DNA from: Podarcis muralis
Taxonomy: Eukaryota
Assembly (NCBI RefSeq): GCF_964188315.1
Contig: NC_135656.1
Coordinates: forward strand, 15,004,001-15,068,000
Length of the DNA stretch: 64,000 nucleotides
Direction of reading: 5' to 3'
The translations under genes were made by a program, and so were the position numbers. This document shows, one piece after another, positions 4,389-64,000 of this stretch. The first letter of the stretch is position 1. Each line of letters begins with the position of its first letter. The notes beneath the pieces are model-generated. The model did not search any database, was not told the origin of the DNA, and saw nothing but the letters and a program-made list of their open reading frames with translations.

Positions 4389-6819
4389 TAATAATAATAA
4401 TAATAATTTTCAAGTTTTTAATTTGTGCCAGGCATATATCTTTCAGGAAGCGGAAAAATGCCCTAGCATAACGCCGTACACCAGTGGCTCTCAAAGGATG
4501 ACAATTGTGGCGGGAAGATTCAAGGACAATCAATGTTATATTTTGGGAAGACTTTGTGTTCTTATGTAGCTGCATTGCTTTATATTTCCCGGATATCCCA
4601 CAATTATATTATAGTGGTACCTTGGGTTAAGTACTTAATTCGTTCTGGAGGTCCGTTCTTAACCTGAAACTGTTCTTAATCTGAAGCACCACTTTAGCTA
4701 ATGGGGCCTCCTGCTGCTGCCACACCACCAGAGCACGATTTCTGTTCTTAACCCGAGGTACTATTTCTGGGTTAGTGGAGTCTGTAACCTGAAGCGTATG
4801 TAACCTGAAGCGTATGTAACCTGAGGTACCACTGTATATCTTTCAGGAAGCGGAAAAATACCCGATCATAACGCCGTACACCAGTGGTTCTCAAAGGATG
4901 ACAATTATAGCGGGAAGATTCAAGGACAATCAATATTATAATTTGGGAAGAATTCATTTTCTTATGTAGCTGCGTTGCTGGATATCCCACAATTATATTA
5001 TAATGTAGCTGGGTTATGTGTTACAAATCAAGCACTGCTAGGAGTTGTATCTCTCTCTTCCTCCCGCCACAAAATGTATTTCTTATCAATTAAAAAAGAA
5101 CAACAGTGTTGCACAAGCAAATTTTTATTCTGAAAGTGTGGCTCCGAGGGAAAACAATGGTGCCTGCATGTGTGCAAATAGTAAAAAAAATCCAAAATAA
5201 TAATAATAACCACCCTCTTTGATAGTGATAGATTTTAAGAATAGCAGAAACAATCCTGAAGAAATTGGTCCAGTTGCCAAGACAGGCAGTTCCCTGGGGA
5301 GTTTGATCCGGGGAGCTGCAATGAGAAGGCTGGTAATGAGGGTGTCAGGAGCTTCCCTTGAAAGACAGCTTGGTTGTTACTGCTGATTTCCCCCTGTAGC
5401 CAGTAGCTGCAGGGAGGAGATCTGGTGTCGCCACACTGTTAGGAGCAATCCTAAATCTTTACCCCTTCCTTTAAAGTCTTTCCCCCTCCCAACACTTCTG
5501 TGTTAGGCAGATGGGTCTGGGGCCGCCATTTTAACTCCCCACAATTCCCCCTAGTGGGACATTGTTCCGGAGCACCCTGGGAAATTAAAACGATGTCCGC
5601 CTCCCAGTAGAGATCTGGCAGCTGCCATTTTGATTCCTCACAATTCCCCGCCAGTGTCGCATCATTTATTTATACTTTTCAAGTTTATACATTTCCTTAG
5701 TTTTACAGTCAATTTGACATTTCTAAGTTTGACTTCCTTCCCCCTCTTTCTGCGGTTCCTTAAATTAATTTTCTGCATATCCAAATTAACTTAATTTGCT
5801 CATTTAATTATCTACTTTAAATATATACTCTTATGAAACTGCAGGTTATTACCATAATCCTGCCAATGTTTTTATCTGTAAATATTCAGTAAACCATTTC
5901 CATTCTTTTATAAAAAGAATTTCTTATTCTTCCGGTAAGTTTCGCCATTTCTGCATATTCCGTAAGTTTTTGTATCCATTCTTCCTTTGCTGGGACTTCT
6001 GCTTCTTTCCATTTTGGGGGCAAGTAGCATTCTTGCTGTTGTAGTAGCATACATAAATAAATTCCTATACAATTTAGGTAGTTCTGATCCTATTATTCCC
6101 AAAAGACAAAATCTTTTTATATATATTAGTTTTTATTAGTTTTACATATAATCACATTACACAGTAATATATCTTCTTCTTATAACTCTTTGGGCTCAAC
6201 TGAGCCTATCAACTTCCTTCCCTCCCGCCTAATAAAATTAAATTTTGCATCTTTACCTTTCACTTTATTTCCTATCCTTGTTACCTAAAATATTAAATTA
6301 CTCAACCTGAATAGGTAGCAATTTCATCTTACACATCTTCAGCTACCGTATTTTTCCGTCTATAAGACGCCCCCATGTGCAAGATGCCCCCTATTTTGGG
6401 GGACTCCAGTTTAAGAAAATGGGGGGAAGATGGCCTCCGTGCATAAGACGCCCCCACATTTTTGACATTATTTTTAATGGAAAAAAACCTAGTCTTACAC
6501 ATGGAAAAATACGGTAACCCTGCTAGTGATGTTAATTTCTTACAGTTGTCTTTCAAATGTAATATAGATTTATTCCAGTCTTTTTGGAATGCTTGGTATC
6601 GCTGCTTCTGGATTCTTCCCGTCAGTTTTGCCAGTTCTGCAAAGTCCATCATTTTCATCTGCCACTCATTGGTAACTCCTGTTGTTTCCATTTTGGGGCT
6701 AACAAAATTCTTGCTGCAGTTGTTGCATATAATATTTTTTTTTATCTTGTCTATACCCAATTAAAAAAGCTTCTGGTTTTTTAACAAAAGTGTTTTTAAA
6801 CATTTTCTTTAACTCATTA

Positions 6820-7072: not shown

Positions 7073-7145
7073 TATATATCACCCCAAAGGAAAAAAACTA
7101 ATCCTGGTTTTCTTTGCTGCTTTTTCCCTAGCTCTTTTGTCAAAC

Positions 7146-9299
7146 ATGCACTGGACACCCGAGCATGCTCAGCCCCTGAACCAGTGGCCGGAGCAGCACC
7201 TTGATGTCTCCTCCACAACCTCATCGCCTGCCCACAAGTCGGACCTCTACCACAGCAGCCGGCAGCGCTTCAACTACGCCTGGGCCAACGATGACATCTC
7301 TGCCCTGACCGCCTCCAACCTGCTGAAGAGGTATGCCGAGAAGTACTCCGGAGTACTGGACTCCCCTTATGACAGGCCGCCGGGGCTCAACACCTACGGG
7401 GATGGCGCCTTTGGGCCCCTCAACGGCCAGAAGGGAGAGATGGAGCCTTGGCCGATGGCGCACAGCTCAGAGGGGGCTTACCCTTTGACCCCGATGCACG
7501 ATGGGTTGCCCACCTCCAAGGGGATCATCCCTCCTGCCGTCACCCCAGGGAACAGCCTCGGGACCTCCCCGGTGGTCTCCAGCAATCTGTCGGACTCCAT
7601 TTACCCCAGTAACACATGCGGGGGACCCCCAACTTCTGGCAGTCTTGGTCCATCTCAGGAGTACCCTTCAGGCTACAGTGGGGCCTACCTGCCATCGGGC
7701 TACTGCAGCCAACCTGCCTCGGCGCTTCCGCCTCCACACCCGTCCACCTTGCATAGCTCAGGCCTCCTTCAACCCAGCCACCCTTCCACGGCGCTCGTCC
7801 CCAGCTACAGCTCCTCAGGACCCATGTACAATTACACCTCAGGCAGCTACCCACCCCAGCCTGGCTATGGCACCATTCACCCTCCCCACCCGTCAGCCTC
7901 GTATTTGCCCTCGGGCATTGCTGCCCCCACCCCCATCCCTCCCTCCTCTCGGCCCCCTGTCGTCCCTGGGTACAGCTACCAGAGCCCCCTCGCTGTGCCA
8001 CCCCTCAGCGGTGAGTCGGGGAGCTCTCTGAAAAGGAAGGCCTTTGATCTCGCCGGCGGTGAGGATGACGGCGAAGGCCGGTATCGCAAATACAGCTATG
8101 AGCAACCAAAGTCTCCATATCAGATGTCTGACAGTGGTGAATGTAGAGGAAATGGGTTCAGCCACAGCTCTGAGGTGCCTTTCAAAGGGGGGAAGAGGCC
8201 TGCAGGCGTGGCAGCCACCACCGTGGCTTCCGAGGAGCCTGTGGGGAAGTACAACAGCCAGCCCATGAAAGGCCTGGTGTCTACAGCTTACAGCGTGGGT
8301 GAAGCCCCGCTGAGGCCTAGCGAGACCTTTGAGAAGTTCACCCCTCCGGCTGCCAATGGGGAACATGGAGGAGAGTCCTTTGCCCTCAGGATGCAGCCCA
8401 AGCCGCCACCCTTCAGCAGCGACAACAGCAGCCAGACTGTGGAAGAACAGCTGAAAGCCATGGACCCGTTTGTTCTGGAGCTTGTGAACAACAAGATCAT
8501 TGATTGCGGTCCTCCAGTTCAGTGGACAGACATCGCAGGGCAAGTCTCTGTCAAAGCTGCCATCGAGGAAGAGCTGGTGTGGCCCATCTTGAGGCCAGGG
8601 GCTTACACGGGGGCAAGCCGGCCACCCAAAACCATCCTTCTCTTTGGACCTCGCGGTGTCGGGAAGACCCTGTTGAGCAGGTGCGTTTGCACCCAGCTGG
8701 GGTCCACCCTGATGAAGCTCAGTGGGACAGCCTTGGTCTCCAAGTGGAAGGCAGAAGCCGAGAAGATCCTGCAGGCCACCTTCTTCGTGTCCAACTGCCG
8801 GCAGCCGGCGGTCGTTCTCCTCACCGACGTGGAATCCCTCCTGGAAGACGCCGCTGTCCTGAAGTCCCAGCTCCTTTCCTACCTGGATAACCTTGCTACC
8901 TCAGGCGAGCAGAACGTCGTGGTCATAGCAACCACCACCAGGCCTGGCAACCTGGACGAAGCCACCCAGAGGAGGTTTGCCAAGCGCTTCTACATCTCCC
9001 CGCCAGACAGCGTTGCCAGGCGTCAGATCCTGCAGCATGCTTTAGCCCAGCAAAACTACTGCCTCAGCGAGAGGGAGATGGCCTCCATTGTCCAACTCAC
9101 CAAGAGCTATTCCGGCAGCGAGCTCCTCCACCTCTGCCAGCAGGTTGCGTCCAGCAAGCTGCAGAGCTTGCCGGGGCAGCTTCAGCCCACCTCCTACAAG
9201 GATTTCGAAAGCGTTTTCTGCAAAATCCACCCTGCCGTCTCTCAGAAGGAGCTGGACTTGTACGTGGAGTGGGATAAAATGTATGGGTCGCAGCACTAG
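7146..9299 (+). CDS. FIGNL2: Fidgetin-like protein 2 (AAA+ microtubule-severing family), single large coding exon
   Basis: N-terminus MHWTPEHAQPLNQWPEQHLDVSSTT and DDISALTASNLLKRYAEKYSGVLDSPY are FIGNL2-type; Pro/Ser/Tyr-rich linker; AAA module with Walker A GPRGVGKT (8646-8669) and Vps4_C-like tail DFESVFCKIHPAVSQKELDLYVEWDKMYG. Acceptor: CTAAT branch point 7098-7102, pyrimidine tract, AG 7130-7131. I use ATG 7146 rather than the TTG 7137 of the ORF track. Confidence 0.96.
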   Translation: MHWTPEHAQPLNQWPEQHLDVSSTTSSPAHKSDLYHSSRQRFNYAWANDDISALTASNLLKRYAEKYSGVLDSPYDRPPGLNTYGDGAFGPLNGQKGEMEPWPMAHSSEGAYPLTPMHDGLPTSKGIIPPAVTPGNSLGTSPVVSSNLSDSIYPSNTCGGPPTSGSLGPSQEYPSGYSGAYLPSGYCSQPASALPPPHPSTLHSSGLLQPSHPSTALVPSYSSSGPMYNYTSGSYPPQPGYGTIHPPHPSASYLPSGIAAPTPIPPSSRPPVVPGYSYQSPLAVPPLSGESGSSLKRKAFDLAGGEDDGEGRYRKYSYEQPKSPYQMSDSGECRGNGFSHSSEVPFKGGKRPAGVAATTVASEEPVGKYNSQPMKGLVSTAYSVGEAPLRPSETFEKFTPPAANGEHGGESFALRMQPKPPPFSSDNSSQTVEEQLKAMDPFVLELVNNKIIDCGPPVQWTDIAGQVSVKAAIEEELVWPILRPGAYTGASRPPKTILLFGPRGVGKTLLSRCVCTQLGSTLMKLSGTALVSKWKAEAEKILQATFFVSNCRQPAVVLLTDVESLLEDAAVLKSQLLSYLDNLATSGEQNVVVIATTTRPGNLDEATQRRFAKRFYISPPDSVARRQILQHALAQQNYCLSEREMASIVQLTKSYSGSELLHLCQQVASSKLQSLPGQLQPTSYKDFESVFCKIHPAVSQKELDLYVEWDKMYGSQH

Positions 9300-33629: not shown

Positions 33630-33773
33630 NNNNNNNNNNNNNNNNNNNNNNNNNNNNNNNNNNNNNNNNNNNNNNNNNNNNNNNNNNNNNNNNNNNNNNN
33701 NNNNNNNNNNNNNNNNNNNNNNNNNNNNNNNNNNNNNNNNNNNNNNNNNNNNNNNNNNNNNNNNNNNNNNNNN
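33630..33773. other. Assembly gap (N run); second gap 52965-53107
   Basis: N runs. Confidence 1.
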
Positions 33774-52727: not shown

Positions 52728-55558
52728 CAAACAGTTCCTAGGGAGAAGCAGAGACAAGATTGCACCTGATTGCCTACCCACTGATGCTTGCCAAAGTGGA
52801 AGGTGGGGCGAATTTTTTTCCTTGGTGAGGTGCAGACAGAGGCATACCTAGGTCTAGGCTGGTGCCTGCCTAGGGTGCAGGCTCAGGGTGTGCCTCTTGC
52901 ACTCTGGCTTGGAGTGGCTAGGAGCCAACCCACCCTAACCCTAGGGTGCTCCTCTGGGCTGTCTNNNNNNNNNNNNNNNNNNNNNNNNNNNNNNNNNNNN
53001 NNNNNNNNNNNNNNNNNNNNNNNNNNNNNNNNNNNNNNNNNNNNNNNNNNNNNNNNNNNNNNNNNNNNNNNNNNNNNNNNNNNNNNNNNNNNNNNNNNNN
53101 NNNNNNNAGGGGTTACAGTGGTACCTTGGTTCTCGAACATAATCTGTTCTGGAAGTCCATTCGACTTCCAAAACATTCGAAAACCAAGGTACGGCTTCTG
53201 ATTGGCGCAGGCGCCCCGGAAACAATAGCCGACAGCCACATCAGACGTTCGGCTTCCAAAAAACGTTCAAAAACCAGAACACTTACTTCCGTGTTTTCAG
53301 TGTTCAGGAGCCGGAATTTTTGAGTACCAAGGCGTTTGAGAACCGAGGTTCCACTATACGGGTTACAAACGCTTCGGGTTACAAACTCCACTAACCTGGA
53401 AGTAGTACCTCGGGTTGAGAACTTTGCTTCAGGATGAGAACAGAAATCACATGGCGGTGGCTGCGGCAGCGGGAGGCCCCATTGGCGAAAGCGCTCCTCA
53501 GGTTAAGAACGGTTTTGGGTTAAGAATGGACCTCTGGAATGAATTAAGTTCATAACCCAAGGTACCACTGTATTAGTGATGAGGCGATAACTATCTAACA
53601 CCATACCCGTCAACATTTCTCCGAAGAAAATAAGGACGTCCTATTCCATCATCACCATTGACTGAATAGACTCGAAATTAGTTGTGGAAGGCAAACCATG
53701 TTAAACCAAAATTGAGCTACCAGCTCTGGCCATTGTCTGTTAGAATCTTGCCGGCAAAATATATTTACATTTAGCTTTGTAATTTATTTGCATAAGGATT
53801 CCAGCATATTTCTAGGAACTCATGTTTATAACCAATTAAAATCCATCACAGTGCTAAGGTGAACGTTCCGATTGCTCCTTGTGAAATGGAATTCTCCCCT
53901 TTTCCTGCTGCCCTAAATCTGTTCTCCCTCAACCCTGTGGAGCAGATCTGGGGGGTGGCAAGGGGCACTCACTGCGGGAGAAAAGGGGGAAAGCCCTGTT
54001 GCACCAGCAGTAATCCTTGCACCTGCAACTCGAAGCACATCAGCCCCCCTAAAGATGATCAGCAAAGGAAACCGGTGGTCCTTCTGTTTATGTTATAATC
54101 CCTGCCCCAGTGGGTTGCTAATGTGCAAATTCAAACCTTGATTAGGTGACCAAATAAGCAGCACACAACCTTATAATCAGCTCCCCATTCCAATTTAGGT
54201 CACCTCCAGACCGTCCGTATTTAGTGGGCGGGATTCAATCACACACCAGAAATTTAGATTAAATTAAATTAAAGCGGGTCAAAGCACTCGGTCACGACAA
54301 ATCCACTTTTTTAAAAAGTGTGTGTGGGGGGGGGGGGTGTAGTTAGGAAAGGGCTACTGTAGACAACCTAGTTATTCAACATTCGTTCTGATTTGCTAGC
54401 ACAAAGCTGACTATAAAAGTTAGACTATAACCCCATCTACATTTTACATGTAAAGCAGTATCCTGCCAATTAAACAGTCATTGCTTGCCCTAAAGAATTC
54501 TGGGAAGTGTAGCTTGTTAAGGGCTCTGAGAGTTCCCAGAACTGTATCAATCAATTAATTAATTATCAATTAATCCTTCTTCCCAGGGAACACTGGCAGC
54601 TGTAGCACTGTGAGGGGACATTATAGTGATGTTCTTGCCAGTTGCTGGTCCCTCAGCCTTCTTGATGAACATTCATATCCCCAAAGGGGCTGTTTTAGGA
54701 TTTGAAATGGGAAGGACCTGTTCAGAATTACGGCTATCTTTGATGTGGTATTTCCCTGGGCAAGAAAGTGATGCCCAGATTACCCCCTTTTCACCAGTCT
54801 GTCCTCCTTAATAACATGGAACATTTCTTGTAAGAAACAGGTCCTCACTTGGTTAGGCCTAGGACACCCAACTGGATAGGAAAGCAAAAGTAGCCACAAG
54901 AACTAGTTAAAGGCAGAGGTGTGGTGGTCTGGGGTCACAGGGGGTTGAAGACCCATTACTGTAACAGGGTCCCCGTCTCCAGCATCCTAGAGCCCACATC
55001 ATCATCATCATCATCATTTATACCCCGCCCATCTGGCTGGGTTTCCTCAGCTGCTCTGGGCGGCTTCCAACAAAGATTAAAAATACATTAAAACACCAGT
55101 CATTAAAAACTTCCCTAAAGAGGGCTGCCTTCAGACGTCTTCTATATGTCAGGTAGTTGTTTATCTCTATGACATCGGATGGGAGGGTGTTCCACAGGGC
55201 GGGTGCCACTACAGAGAAGGCCCTCTGCCTGGTTCAGCATGAAAGGGAACCTTTTCATCACTGAGCAGTCTTCTCACTCTTTGTGCTGAATGGACTCAAT
55301 CAAAGTGGGCAGGAAACTGAGGATTGGCTCCTAGGGTCACTCTGGAGAAGGCACTTTTGGAGTAGATGTGCAGAGTTGCCCCTTTAGCATTAAAAAACAA
55401 ACAAAACCCAAGTTATGTAATTTCTTCCTGTTGTTGTTCTCTGGGTCTGAGGGTGACAGGCTGCACAACTGAAATGTTGGATAGTTGCCTCCATAGGTAG
55501 TCCAACTTGGTGATGGTGATTATTGATTATTGACAGTGATATGGAGAAGGGCCATAGC

Positions 55559-61146: not shown

Positions 61147-62004
61147 CCGTATTTTTCGCCCCATAGGACGCACCGGCCCATAGGACGCACCTAGTTTTGG
61201 GGGGGGGGAATAAAGGGGGGAAATTTTTATTTCCCCCCCAGGTGCGCTGTGCTAAGCCCGAAGCTTGGGGCGTGCGGAGCTCAGCGCGCCCCAAGCTTCT
61301 GGGTGCCGGCAAGGTCTCCGCTAGCCATGGGAGAGCCGCGCGGCTCTCCCAGGGCTAGCGGAGCACTGCGCTAATCCCGAAGCTTGGGGCATGCGGAGCT
61401 CAGCGCACCCCAAGCATCTGGGTGCCGGCAAGGTCTCCGCTAGCCATGGGAGAGCCGCGCGGCTCTCCCAGGGCTAGCGGAGCACTGCGCTAATCCCGAA
61501 GCTTGGGGCATGCGGAGCTCAGCGCGCCCCAAGCTTCTGGGTGCCGGCAAGGTCTCTGCTAGCCGTGGGAGAGCCGCGCGGCTCTCCCAGGGCTAGCGGA
61601 GCACTGCGCTAATCCCGAAGCTTGGGGCATGCGGAGCTCAGCGCGCCCCAAGCTTCTGGGTGCTAGCAAGGTCTCCGCTAGCTGTGGGAGAGCCACGTGA
61701 CTTCGCGCGGCTCTCCCACAGCTAGCGGACCACTGCGCTAATCCCGAAGCTTGGGGCCTGCGGAGCTCAGCGTGCCCCAAGCTTCTGGGTGCAGGCAAGC
61801 TCTCCGCTAGCCCTGGGAGAGCTGGGTCTCCCATGGCTAGCGGATAGCTTCCTGAAGCCTGGAGAGCGAGAGGGGTCGGTGCGCACCGACCCCTCTCGCT
61901 CTCCAGGCTTCAGCGAAAGCCTGCATTCACCCCATAGGACGCGCACACATTTCCCCTTCATTTTTGGAGGGGAAAAAGTGCGTCTTATAGGGCGAAAAAT
62001 ACGG
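61147..62004. mobile_element. Tc1/mariner (Tc2/pogo-like) MITE with internal 119-bp palindromic tandem array
   Basis: TIRs CCGTATTTTTCGCCC/GGGCGAAAAATACGG, TA on both sides; about 4.5 units of 119 bp at ~61250-61845. Confidence 0.85.
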
Positions 62005-62137: not shown

Positions 62138-62143
62138 TATAAA
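62138..62143 (+). promoter_or_regulatory. TATA box of the aquaporin gene
   Basis: TATAAA 137 nt upstream of the ATG. Confidence 0.6.
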
Positions 62144-62274
62144 GCTGAAGTTTCCTGGTCCAGCCCAGTATGTTGTAAACACTCGCTTGTTTCCTTAGTG
62201 CTTGAGCATCAGGGAAGGAATCAAGAGGCGAGGCAGAATCCACACACAGAGCTGTCTTCCAACCTCTTTTCAGG

Positions 62275-62634
62275 ATGTGGAGGGAACTGCGGATGGTGGC
62301 TTTCTACCGGGCTGTCTTTGCAGAAATCCTGGCCACAGCCATCTTTGTCTTCTTCGGCCTGGGCTCGGAGTTGAATTGGCCAGAGAAGCCCTCTGTCCTG
62401 CAGACTGCCATCACCTTCAACTTGGCCGCAGCCACCGCTGTCCAGATCGCCTGGCATGCCAGCGGATCCCACCTCAACCCAGCAGTGACCTTGGCCTTCC
62501 TGCTTGGCTCTCGCATATCGTTGGCGAGGGCAGCCTGCTATATACTTGCCCAGATGGTCGGAGGCATTGTCGGAGCAGCCGTCCTTTACGAGGTGACTCC
62601 TGAGGACATACGAGGAACTTTAGGCACCAGTACG
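62275..62634 (+). CDS. AQP6: Aquaporin, AQP6-like, exon 1 (120 codons)
   Basis: MIP-family TM1-3 with first NPA (62476-62484); PSVLQTAITFNL carries the AQP6-diagnostic Asn; 360-nt coding exon ending ACG|GTACGT. Aquaporin identity is near certain, AQP6 orthology less so. Confidence 0.8.
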
Positions 62635-63394
62635 GTACGTCTGTCTCCTTTTCTGTCTTCTGAATGTTTGCCGTCGTCAGGAAAGGCGAGGATGAGGCAA
62701 GGCCTGTCTAAAACAGCCAGTCTGTACCTGGGATGTTTCTGTTACTTAAAAAAAATAATAATATTTCATTAGAAGAATGTCATTCATAAAAAGAGAAGAA
62801 AGGTGAGAAAAGGAAGGAAGAAAAAGAAAGAATATAGTTACATCACCATACCTTAATATACAGATGTGTGTATTTATGGTCCAGCTCTCACTTCCATACA
62901 TCACTACTGGGAAAACCAAAGCTTTAGCTATACGGACCTTTGTTGGCAAGGTGATGTCTCTGCTTTTTAAGATGCTGTCTAGGTTTGTCATTGCTTTTCT
63001 CCCAAGAAGCAGGCGTCTTTTCATTTCATGGCTGCTGTCACCATCTGCAGTGATCATGGAGCCCAAGAAAGTAAAATCTCTCACTGCCTCCATTTCTTCC
63101 CCTTCTATTTGCCAGGAGGTGATGGGACCAGCGGCCATGATCTTCGTTTTTTTGATGTTGAGCTTCAAACCATATTTTGCACTCTCCTCTTTCACCCTCA
63201 TTAAACCCTCATTAAAGGGTTCTTTAATTCCTCCTCACTTTCTGCCATCAATGTTGTCTCATCTGCATATCTGAGGTTGTTGATATTTCTTCTGGCAATC
63301 TTAATTCCATAAATCTAAGAGATTGGCAGCTTTGGTGATGGTATACCGTGGCCCCACGAAAGCTCTTTCACTATTTCCTCCTCCTCCTCCCCAG

Positions 63395-63553
63395 GTGAGG
63401 GTCAACGTCTCATCCGGACAAGCTGTGTCCATCGAGCTCATTTTGACATTGCAGCTGGTTCTAAGCTATCTTGTGTCCACCGATAGCAGCCGAAACAAAG
63501 GTTCTCCAGCTATCTTGATCGGTGTCTCCGTTGCCCTGGGACACTTAATTGGG
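63395..63553 (+). CDS. AQP6: Aquaporin, AQP6-like, exon 2 (53 codons)
   Basis: Pyrimidine tract CAG|GTG ... GGG|GTAAGT; [23 protein letters not shown]...[18 protein letters not shown]; 159 nt as I recall for mammalian AQP6 (165 nt in AQP2). Exons 3-4 lie beyond the window. Confidence 0.82.
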
Positions 63554-64000
63554 GTAAGTGGAGGACCTGGGGCAGTTTAAAAACTACAGGGGATCTGATG
63601 AGCAAAGGAAGAAGTAGCTCTTGCTGATGACCAATTAATCTGTAGAATGCTCGAAGGAGATGCTCAAATTACACAGAGTACTCCTGTCCAATGCAAAATA
63701 AAAATCAGAAGGGAAAGTTATGTTTACCTAGGTGCTCATTAAAGAGCTGAATGCTCTTTAGAAGCAAGGTGTTAGGTAAAGGTAAAGGGACCCCTGATCA
63801 TTAGGCCCAGTCGTGGCCGACTCTTGGGTTGTGGCGCTCATCTCGCTTTATTGGGCGAGGGAGCCGGCGTACAGCTTCTGGGTCATGTGGCCAGCAGGAC
63901 TAAGCCGCTTCTGGCGAACCAGAGCAGCGCACGGAAACGCTGTTTACCTTCCCGCCGGAGCAGTACCTATTTATCTACTTGCACTTTGATGTGCTTTCGA

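What the first reader, a model, noticed from the sequence alone, without database searches (positions are those of the whole stretch)
62275..63553. Reptile AQP6-like channel with a mosaic of anion-channel residues
Seen: ITFNL with Asn49 (codon 62419-62421), Ala at +3, His61 (62455-62457) in WHASG, Ser in LQLVLS, and a short MWRELR N-terminus. Established for rat AQP6: Asn60 confers anion permeability (N60G gives a water-selective channel), Thr63 and Lys72 shape anion selectivity, Cys155 is one of the Hg-activation sites, and the extended N-terminus promotes intracellular retention. Inference: this protein keeps N60 but has T63A, K72H and C155S and an AQP2/MIP-like N-terminus. It could be a plasma-membrane anion or water channel whose charge selectivity depends on His protonation, a combination not present in mammalian AQP6.
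Basis: partly seen in the sequence, partly recalled or inferred. Interest (0 to 1): 0.72.

Follow-up and report, generated by a model that had tools for sequence, protein, structure and literature searches.

The report
Wall lizard aquaporin-6 gene start
These are the first two exons of the common wall lizard's aquaporin-6 gene, which is already annotated and is transcribed, and most of its "unusual" residues are the normal state for reptile aquaporin-6.

Summary
The window is 100% identical to Podarcis muralis chromosome OZ076955.1. The gene is already annotated there as XP_028566432.2, "aquaporin-6-like".

A maximum-likelihood tree places it inside the amniote AQP6 clade (support 100/100), apart from AQP2 and AQP5.

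The "mosaic" is mostly ordinary:
- Asn at rat position 60 is found in all 24 amniote AQP6 sequences; all 59 other sequences have Gly.
- Ala at position 63 and the short N-terminus are shared by all sauropsid AQP6.
- His at position 72 is the ancestral His of the loop-B motif just before the first NPA box. It is present in AQP0, AQP2 and AQP5, and it becomes Gln or Arg in other squamates.
- Only Cys155-to-Ser is specific to lacertids, and that codon reads Cys in one public transcript assembly.

Transcript contigs confirm both splice junctions. dN/dS against Lacerta agilis is 0.28.

The most unusual feature lies outside the window, in exon 3: the selectivity-filter Arg is Lys in lacertids and in Rhineura. 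No reptile AQP6 has been assayed. The scan had not noted this gene before.

The parts
62138..62144 (+). TATAAAG box, the likely core promoter of the gene
   Evidence: Read from the sequence. The longest transcript contig begins at 62177, about 35 nt downstream. Promoter function is inferred.
62177..62274 (+). 5' untranslated part of exon 1 (minimum extent)
   Evidence: Contigs of runs X1 and X2 cover 62177-62636 and 62215-62636. The upstream reading frame holds stops and no start codon.
62275..62634 (+). Coding exon 1 (120 aa): N-terminus, TM1, TM2, loop B with the first NPA box (Asn68 at 62476-62478) and TM3. Includes Phe48, Asn49 (62419-62421), Ala52 and His61 (62455-62457).
   Evidence: Pfam MIP E = 2e-33. 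Human AQP2 in the PDB matches at E = 5e-40. Identical to residues 1-120 of XP_028566432.2. Donor GTACGT. The splice junction is seen in transcripts.
62635..63394 (+). Intron 1 (760 nt, GT..AG), which carries a high-copy retroelement fragment at about 62746-63340 on the minus strand
   Evidence: The joint 62633 to 63394 skips 760 nt with GT..AG ends and is shifted by +1. Depth at 62871-63339 runs to thousands, as expected for a repeat. The minus-strand ORF 62746-63201 has no Pfam match. From memory it resembles the tail of a BovB-type LINE ORF2.
63395..63553 (+). Coding exon 2 (53 aa): loop C end, TM4, TM5. Includes Ser144 (63464-63466, the rat Cys155 position), Gly163 (the TM5 crossing glycine) and the filter His170 (63542-63544).
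   Evidence: Pfam MIP E = 8e-8. Identical to residues 121-173 of XP_028566432.2. Both junctions are seen in transcripts. 63464 A>T (Ser to Cys) in run X2 and 63515 T>A (Leu161 to Met) in both contig runs.
63554..64000 (+). Start of intron 2. Exons 3 and 4 lie beyond the window, 2.4 kb and 3.0 kb downstream of exon 2.
   Evidence: Donor GTAAGT. Locus L005 is identical to the window over 4726 nt and has exon 3 at 6705-6788 and exon 4 at 7329-7529. A high-copy repeat lies at 63742-64000.

Best explanation
This is the 5' half of the single AQP6 orthologue of Podarcis muralis, a four-exon gene that is already annotated as 'aquaporin-6-like'. It is transcribed, correctly spliced and under purifying selection. 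The product is a classical six-helix aquaporin protomer. It has both NPA boxes, the TM5 crossing glycine, and filter residues Phe, His and Cys; the fourth filter residue, normally Arg, is Lys and is encoded in exon 3 outside the window. The asparagine at the TM2/TM5 crossing point makes rat AQP6 a gated anion channel with poor water permeability, and it is invariant in all amniote AQP6 sampled. I therefore infer that the lizard protein most likely works in the same basic way, as a gated nitrate/halide-conducting pore with low constitutive water flow. It lacks the eutherian N-terminal retention extension, so it may reach the plasma membrane more readily. The other 'mosaic' residues are the shared sauropsid or ancestral states and not a special adaptation. 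The identity of the gene is shown here. The transport properties and the location in the cell are inferred.
For: Identity:
- The window is 100% identical over 4726 nt to P. muralis OZ076955.1.
- The 173 aa are identical to XP_028566432.2, 'aquaporin-6-like'.

Orthology:
- In the careful ML tree of 83 rows, amniote AQP6 including the window forms a clade with 100/100 support. Its sister is an amphibian clade that appears to correspond to the AQP6ub/vs-type channels of PMC4245216; that match is my inference. AQP2 and AQP5 branch elsewhere.
- Median identity to the window is 62% for mammalian AQP6 and 56-57% for AQP2 and AQP5.
- Turtle AQP6 lies tail-to-tail with a RhoGAP/C1-domain gene that I take to be RACGAP1, as in mammals. 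In Lacerta agilis, AQP6 is next to another MIP gene. This fits the AQP5L-6 pair reported for the green anole (PMC4245216).

Activity of the gene:
- Transcript contigs cover only the exons and show the 62634|63395 junction and an exon 2 to exon 3 continuation.
- dN/dS is 0.28 against L. agilis, and the splice sites are conserved.

Mechanism:
- Asn at rat position 60 occurs in 24 of 24 amniote AQP6 rows and Gly in 59 of 59 others. The TM5 Gly is retained.
- N60G abolishes anion permeability and raises water permeability in rat AQP6 (PMC4150397, PMC6262540).
- The retention signal lies in the AQP6 N-terminus (PMC8825993), and the extension is described for eutherian groups (PMC4245216).
Against: - No sauropsid AQP6 has been assayed, so anion conduction is extrapolated from rat.
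- Thr63, needed for full nitrate permeability in rat, is Ala here.
- Lys72, linked to anion over cation selectivity, is His here.
- The filter Arg is Lys in lacertids, which could change conductance in either direction.
- The closest outgroup in my tree is an amphibian clade that I take to be the AQP6-type channels PMC4245216 describes as mediating vasotocin-responsive water uptake. If so, a water-channel role is the ancestral state.
- Two bulk RNA-seq runs of unknown tissue show almost no reads on the exons, so expression is restricted.
- The kind of library in the two runs that do show transcripts is only guessed to be RNA. The intron-skipping contigs argue that it is.
Confidence: 0.6

Rival explanations
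1. The lizard protein is essentially a constitutive or hormonally trafficked water channel, like the amphibian AQP6-type channels and AQP2. On this view Asn49 is tolerated in the sauropsid background and does not open an anion path.
For: It has the short AQP2/MIP-like N-terminus and the ancestral His at position 72. It lacks Thr63. The sister clade in the tree is an amphibian clade that I take to be the AQP6ub/vs-type channels; PMC4245216 argues that the ancestral AQP6 role was water conservation.
Against: Asn at the helix-crossing point is invariant in all 24 amniote AQP6 rows, across the whole mammal-sauropsid split, while every other clade keeps Gly. That points to a shared derived property. 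In rat this Asn is what lowers water permeability (PMC4150397).
Confidence: 0.27
2. One reading: a plasma-membrane channel whose charge selectivity is set by protonation of His61, a lizard-specific combination.
For: His61 occupies the position of rat Lys72 at the cytoplasmic pore mouth. Changing Lys72 alters ion selectivity in rat AQP6 (PMC6262540). The N-terminal retention extension is absent.
Against: This His is the ancestral residue of the conserved loop-B motif in water-selective AQP0, AQP2 and AQP5: 57 of 59 non-AQP6 rows have it, and so does human AQP2. In other squamate AQP6 it is Gln (elapids, agamids, a cordylid) or Arg (Crotalus, Sceloporus), so titratability is not conserved. One review states that K72E hardly affected anion conductance (PMC4150397).
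Confidence: 0.08
3. The lacertid gene is under relaxed constraint and is losing channel function.
For: Lacertids have the longest root-to-tip paths among squamate AQP6, 0.37-0.40 against 0.13-0.34. They carry changes at almost invariant sites: Cys155 to Ser, filter Arg to Lys, and Pro to Arg after the second NPA box. Archosaurs lost AQP6 altogether (PMC4245216).
Against: The 266-268 aa reading frame is intact in five lacertid species, and the changes are the same in all of them. dN/dS is 0.28. Spliced transcripts are seen.
Confidence: 0.05

Closest known systems
Mammalian AQP6 (rat, mouse, human): an intracellular, acid- and Hg-gated anion channel
   Same: Same orthology group (100/100 clade). 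Asn at the TM2/TM5 crossing with Gly retained in TM5, Phe and His of the selectivity filter, the first NPA box, and Cys at the rat 190 position (exon 3, L005).
   Different: No extended N-terminus. Ala for Thr63, His for Lys72, Ser for Cys155 (polymorphic) and Lys for the filter Arg. Identity over the 173 aa is only 61-64%.
Sauropsid AQP6 as catalogued by Finn et al. 2014 (PMC4245216) and in RefSeq/Ensembl annotations
   Same: It is one of these. Ala63, the short MW(R/K)EL start and the four-exon structure are shared with squamates, turtles and tuatara.
   Different: That paper lists the sauropsid AQP6 filter as F-H-C-R. Lacertids and Rhineura have Lys at the last position, and iguanians have Gln at the His position. 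Ser144 is found only in lacertids.
Amphibian AQP6-type channels (AQP6ub/vs, formerly AQP-h2/h3, a2-type)
   Same: The sister group in the tree is an amphibian clade that I take to be these channels. Short N-terminus and His at position 72.
   Different: The amphibian proteins keep Gly at the crossing point and Ile or Val at position 63. They are described as mediating vasotocin-responsive water uptake (PMC4245216).
Human AQP2 (PDB 4NEF, 4OJ2, 8GCL)
   Same: The best solved-structure match for exon 1, E = 5e-40, aligned residue for residue with an MW..ELR start and His61.
   Different: AQP2 has Gly, not Asn, at the crossing point. The lizard's own AQP2 lineage is a separate clade that includes the lacertid Zootoca.

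Membership tests
MIP / classical aquaporin family | Pfam MIP domain above the gathering score | tested here: met
   Exon 1 scores 116.5 bits and exon 2 scores 32.7 bits against a cut-off of 25.
MIP / classical aquaporin family | Two NPA boxes | tested here: met
   The first NPA box is at residues 68-70 in the window. The second is in exon 3 of the same genome, L005 6705-6788.
MIP / classical aquaporin family | Aromatic/arginine filter F-H-C-R of water-selective aquaporins | tested here: not met
   Phe48 and His170 are in the window and Cys179 is in exon 3. The Arg position is Lys185 (codon AAA in L. agilis) in five lacertids and Rhineura.
AQP6 orthology group | Falls in the AQP6 clade and not with AQP2, AQP5 or AQP0 | tested here: met
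   The clade of 24 amniote AQP6 rows has 100/100 support.
AQP6 orthology group | Conserved linkage to the AQP cluster or RACGAP1 | tested here: inconclusive
   L. agilis has a second MIP gene tail-to-tail 8 kb downstream. Turtle AQP6 abuts a RhoGAP/C1-domain gene that I take to be RACGAP1. In this window the 62 kb upstream holds histone genes and a fidgetin-family ORF but no aquaporin. The downstream side of this genome was not examined beyond 3 kb.
AQP6-type anion channel (as defined in rat) | Asn at the TM2/TM5 crossing point (rat Asn60) | tested here: met
   Asn49 is AAC at 62419-62421. The residue is invariant in 24 of 24 amniote AQP6 rows.
AQP6-type anion channel (as defined in rat) | Thr63 and Lys72 | tested here: not met
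   Ala52 and His61, as in the other sauropsids.
AQP6-type anion channel (as defined in rat) | Hg-activation cysteines 155 and 190 | tested here: inconclusive
   The 190 equivalent is Cys. The 155 equivalent is Ser in the reference but Cys in run X2.
AQP6-type anion channel (as defined in rat) | Extended N-terminal retention segment | tested here: not met
   No residues precede the MWRELR start and there is no upstream in-frame start codon. The extension is described for eutherian groups (PMC4245216).
AQP6-type anion channel (as defined in rat) | Acid- or Hg-gated anion conductance with low water permeability | not testable with these tools
   This needs oocyte or bilayer assays. The searched literature holds no such assay for any reptile AQP6.

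The most novel reading that the evidence does not exclude
The Gly-to-Asn change that makes AQP6 an anion channel arose in the amniote ancestor and not in mammals. Squamates then remodelled the selectivity filter on top of it: Arg to Lys in lacertids and Rhineura, His to Gln in iguanians. On this reading the wall lizard protein is a plasma-membrane anion channel whose selectivity is unlike any characterised aquaporin.
Probability: 0.18. Interest if true: 0.55.

Novelty: already known. Interest (0 to 1): 0.24.

Why it matters
As a gene it is ordinary. It is a correctly predicted and already annotated orthologue, so the scan gains little from it. There are two modest points of interest. First, the residue that turns AQP6 from a water channel into an anion channel is shared by all reptile and mammal AQP6 sequences sampled. 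That dates the change to the amniote stem and qualifies the published view that AQP6 took on its new function in mammals. Second, lacertids carry a natural Arg-to-Lys change at the nearly invariant filter arginine. This would be a convenient natural variant for testing how that residue controls ion permeation.

Tried and rejected
- AQP2 or AQP5 identity: rejected by the tree and by identity ranges.
- A hidden longer N-terminus: rejected. The upstream frame has stops and no start codon, and transcripts start near 62177.
- A second aquaporin gene in the window: none found by tblastn of the 173 aa against both strands.
- A pseudogene: rejected by the intact frame in five lacertids, dN/dS of 0.28 and spliced transcripts.
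- Strand or level of expression from raw RNA-seq: runs X21 and X22 gave almost no reads on the exons, so nothing can be said about tissue or level.
- Pfam on the intron ORF (62746-63201, minus strand) and on five other long ORFs found nothing.
- The primary papers Liu 2005 (PMC548568) and Nagase 2007 (PMC2504719) are not held. The rat mutagenesis facts are therefore cited from reviews (PMC4150397, PMC6262540, PMC8825993).
- A search of the scan's notes for "aquaporin" in this genome found nothing.
- Structure prediction was not run, because the tools return no coordinates for measuring residue geometry.
- No N run was filled. L005 was fetched with a 3 kb flank so that it does not reach the N runs.

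Full report
**What is there**

The stretch 62275-63553 holds two coding exons on the + strand.
- Exon 1 runs from the ATG at 62275 to 62634 (360 nt, 120 aa) and is followed by GTACGT.
- Exon 2 runs from 63395, after AG at 63393-63394, to 63553 (159 nt, 53 aa) and is followed by GTAAGT.
- Both pieces match Pfam MIP, with E = 2e-33 and 8e-8.
- Exon 1 matches solved human AQP2 at E = 5e-40, then AQP0 and AQP5.
- The frame upstream of the ATG has stops and no alternative start codon, so the short MWRELR start is real.

**Source and annotation**

A word search gave "aquaporin-6-like" of Podarcis muralis (98%) and Lacerta agilis (93%) as best hits. These were followed by AQP6 of other squamates, turtles and tuatara, and then by mammalian AQP6.

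The members of the Podarcis cluster include XP_028566432.2 (P. muralis), which is identical to the window's 173 residues. The locus that encodes it is OZ076955.1, 15,063,275-15,073,803, in assembly GCA_964188315.1. It is identical to the window at all 4726 overlapping bases. So the window is P. muralis and the gene is already annotated. Exons 3 and 4 lie 2.4 and 3.0 kb beyond exon 2, outside the window.

**Is it expressed?**

Contigs of two public runs with the same species label cover only 62177/62215-62636 and 63394-63553.
- They join 62634 to 63395 across a GT..AG intron.
- One contig continues from 63553 into sequence encoding HYYTTCSMNP, the start of exon 3.
- The library type of these runs is only guessed to be RNA, but intron-skipping contigs are what mRNA gives.
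- A TATAAAG box sits at 62138, about 35 nt before the first transcribed base seen.
- Two bulk RNA-seq runs of unknown tissue gave almost no reads on the exons.
- Against L. agilis, exons 1-2 have dS 0.104, dN 0.029 and dN/dS 0.28, and the splice sites are the same.

**Orthology**

I built a tree of 83 rows: the window, 23 amniote AQP6, 15 AQP2, 9 AQP5, 29 amphibian paralogues and 6 rows named MIP/AQP0.
- The careful IQ-TREE run gives amniote AQP6 plus the window as one clade with 100/100 support.
- Sauropsid AQP6 has 97/84 support, squamate AQP6 100/98 and lacertids 100/100.
- The sister group is a 17-row amphibian clade. It appears to correspond to the AQP6ub/vs (a2-type) channels of Finn et al. 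2014 (PMC4245216); that match is my inference.
- AQP2 and AQP5 branch elsewhere.
- Median identity of the window's 173 aa is 70% to other sauropsid AQP6, 62% to mammalian AQP6 and 56-57% to AQP2 and AQP5.

Synteny is partly informative.
- Turtle AQP6 is tail-to-tail with a RhoGAP/C1-domain gene that I take to be RACGAP1, as in mammals.
- L. agilis AQP6 is tail-to-tail with another MIP gene whose last exon has an AQP5-like C-terminus (my judgement from memory of AQP5). This fits the AQP5L-6 pair described for the green anole (PMC4245216).
- The 62 kb upstream in this window has no aquaporin. It holds a histone cluster and a fidgetin-family ORF.

**The "mosaic"**

Rat numbering was transferred through a squirrel AQP6 that has Asn60, Lys72, Cys155, Cys190 and Arg196 at those numbers. 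The columns read as follows.

| Rat position | Amniote AQP6 | Other clades | Window |
|---|---|---|---|
| 60 | Asn in all 24 rows | Gly in all 59 rows | Asn49 |
| 63 | Thr in mammals, Ala in all 18 sauropsid rows | mostly Ile or Val | Ala52 |
| 72 | Lys in mammals; His, Gln or Arg in sauropsids | His in 57 of 59 rows, Pro in two | His61 |
| 155 | Cys, except Ser in lacertids | Cys in all rows | Ser144 |
| N-terminus | extended in mammals, short in sauropsids | short | short |

- **Position 60.** The substitution that Liu et al. showed to be decisive in rat maps to the amniote stem. I cite that work through reviews (PMC4150397, PMC6262540).
- **Position 72.** The His belongs to the conserved loop-B motif just before the first NPA box. 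Human AQP2 has His at the aligned residue 61. In sauropsid AQP6 it is His in turtles, tuatara, geckos, lacertids, anguimorphs, boas and one cobra. It is Gln in most elapids, agamids and a cordylid, and Arg in Crotalus and Sceloporus. His is therefore ancestral and is not conserved as a titratable residue.
- **Position 155.** Ser occurs only in the three lacertid rows of the tree set (the window, P. muralis, L. agilis). Outside that set, P. lilfordi, P. raffonei and Zootoca also have Ser. Lacertids use AGC where other reptiles use TGC or TGT. In run X2 the contig reads TGC at 63464, at depth 287. The site thus varies within what is labelled the same species.
- **N-terminus.** All sauropsid rows start like AQP2/AQP0. 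The few longer rows are alternative gene models. The extension is described for eutherian groups (PMC4245216), and the retention signal lies in it (PMC8825993).

**Outside the window**

Exon 3 of this genome (L005) and of L. agilis (L001) encodes NPAKSFGRS where other aquaporins have NPARSFGPA.
- The filter arginine is Lys (AAA, against AGA or CGG in other reptiles).
- The change is found in P. muralis, P. lilfordi, P. raffonei, L. agilis, Zootoca vivipara and the amphisbaenian Rhineura.
- Iguanian AQP6 (Anolis, Sceloporus, Pogona, Phrynocephalus) has Gln for the filter His, checked as CAG in Pogona DNA.
- Finn et al. list the sauropsid AQP6 filter as F-H-C-R (PMC4245216), so these variants appear not to have been described.
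- Lacertids also have the longest paths within squamate AQP6.

**Mechanism**

Shown here: a transcribed, conserved AQP6 orthologue with the anion-channel Asn and an intact pore scaffold.

Inferred: a gated, anion-conducting pore with poor water permeability, as in rat AQP6, and less intracellular retention because the eutherian extension is missing.

Several points weaken the extrapolation.
- Thr63 and Lys72 are absent.
- The filter Arg is Lys.
- The sister clade is amphibian; if it is the AQP6ub/vs type, the ancestral role was water uptake (PMC4245216).
- No reptile AQP6 has been assayed. One study reports AQP6 expression in an agamid lizard (PMC12731239).

I put the identity at about 0.98. 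For function I put about 0.5 on rat-like anion conduction, about 0.27 on a plain water channel, about 0.08 on the His-switch idea and about 0.05 on decay.

**Verdict**

The gene is already known and annotated, so interest is low to modest. The interest lies mainly in the amniote-wide Asn and in the filter changes that sit outside the window.

Noticed in passing
L005:6705-6788 (same genome, exon 3, outside the window); L001:13718: The selectivity-filter arginine after the second NPA box is Lys (NPAKSF), and the following Pro is Arg. This holds in five lacertid species, and the Lys also in Rhineura. Other reptiles have Arg.
   Followed up: partly
L002:21780 (Pogona AQP6); proteins P0012, P0021, P0022, P0024: Iguanian AQP6 has Gln in place of the selectivity-filter His (CAG in Pogona DNA).
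   Followed up: partly
window 63464: Contigs of run X2 read T where the reference has A, turning Ser144 (AGC) into Cys (TGC). Run X1 keeps A. Both runs also show 62525 C>T (Ala84 to Val) and 63515 T>A (Leu161 to Met).
   Followed up: partly
window 36887-37198 (+), 38015-38611 (-), 39856-40245 (-), 42599-42910 (-): A histone gene cluster (H4, H3, H2A, H4 by Pfam) lies 20-25 kb upstream of the aquaporin gene. In mammals AQP5 sits upstream of AQP6.
   Followed up: partly
window 7137-9299 (+): An uninterrupted 720-aa ORF with an AAA ATPase domain. The closest solved structure is fidgetin-like protein 1 (E = 6e-80). It is possibly the single-exon fidgetin-like 2 gene.
   Followed up: partly
window 62746-63340 and 63742-64000: High-copy repeats inside introns 1 and 2, with very deep coverage in all four runs. 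The first has a 151-aa minus-strand ORF with no Pfam match that, from memory, looks like the tail of a BovB-type LINE.
   Followed up: partly
window 61853-61910: A perfect inverted repeat of about 29 nt per arm (GAAGCCTGGAGAGCGAGAGGGGTCGGTGC and its complement). It lies within a repetitive stretch just upstream of the promoter.
   Followed up: no
L001:22547-24529 (-), Lacerta agilis: A second MIP gene (268 aa) lies tail-to-tail 8 kb downstream of AQP6. From memory its last exon has an AQP5-like C-terminus, probably the AQP5L gene of Finn et al. Turtle AQP6 (L004) instead abuts a RhoGAP/C1-domain gene that I take to be RACGAP1.
   Followed up: partly
tree: The two mammalian rows named AQP5 (Ursus, Loxodonta) group with mammalian AQP2 and not with sauropsid AQP5.
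   Followed up: no
window 33630-33773 and 52965-53107: Two runs of N (144 and 143 nt). They were left as they are.
   Followed up: no
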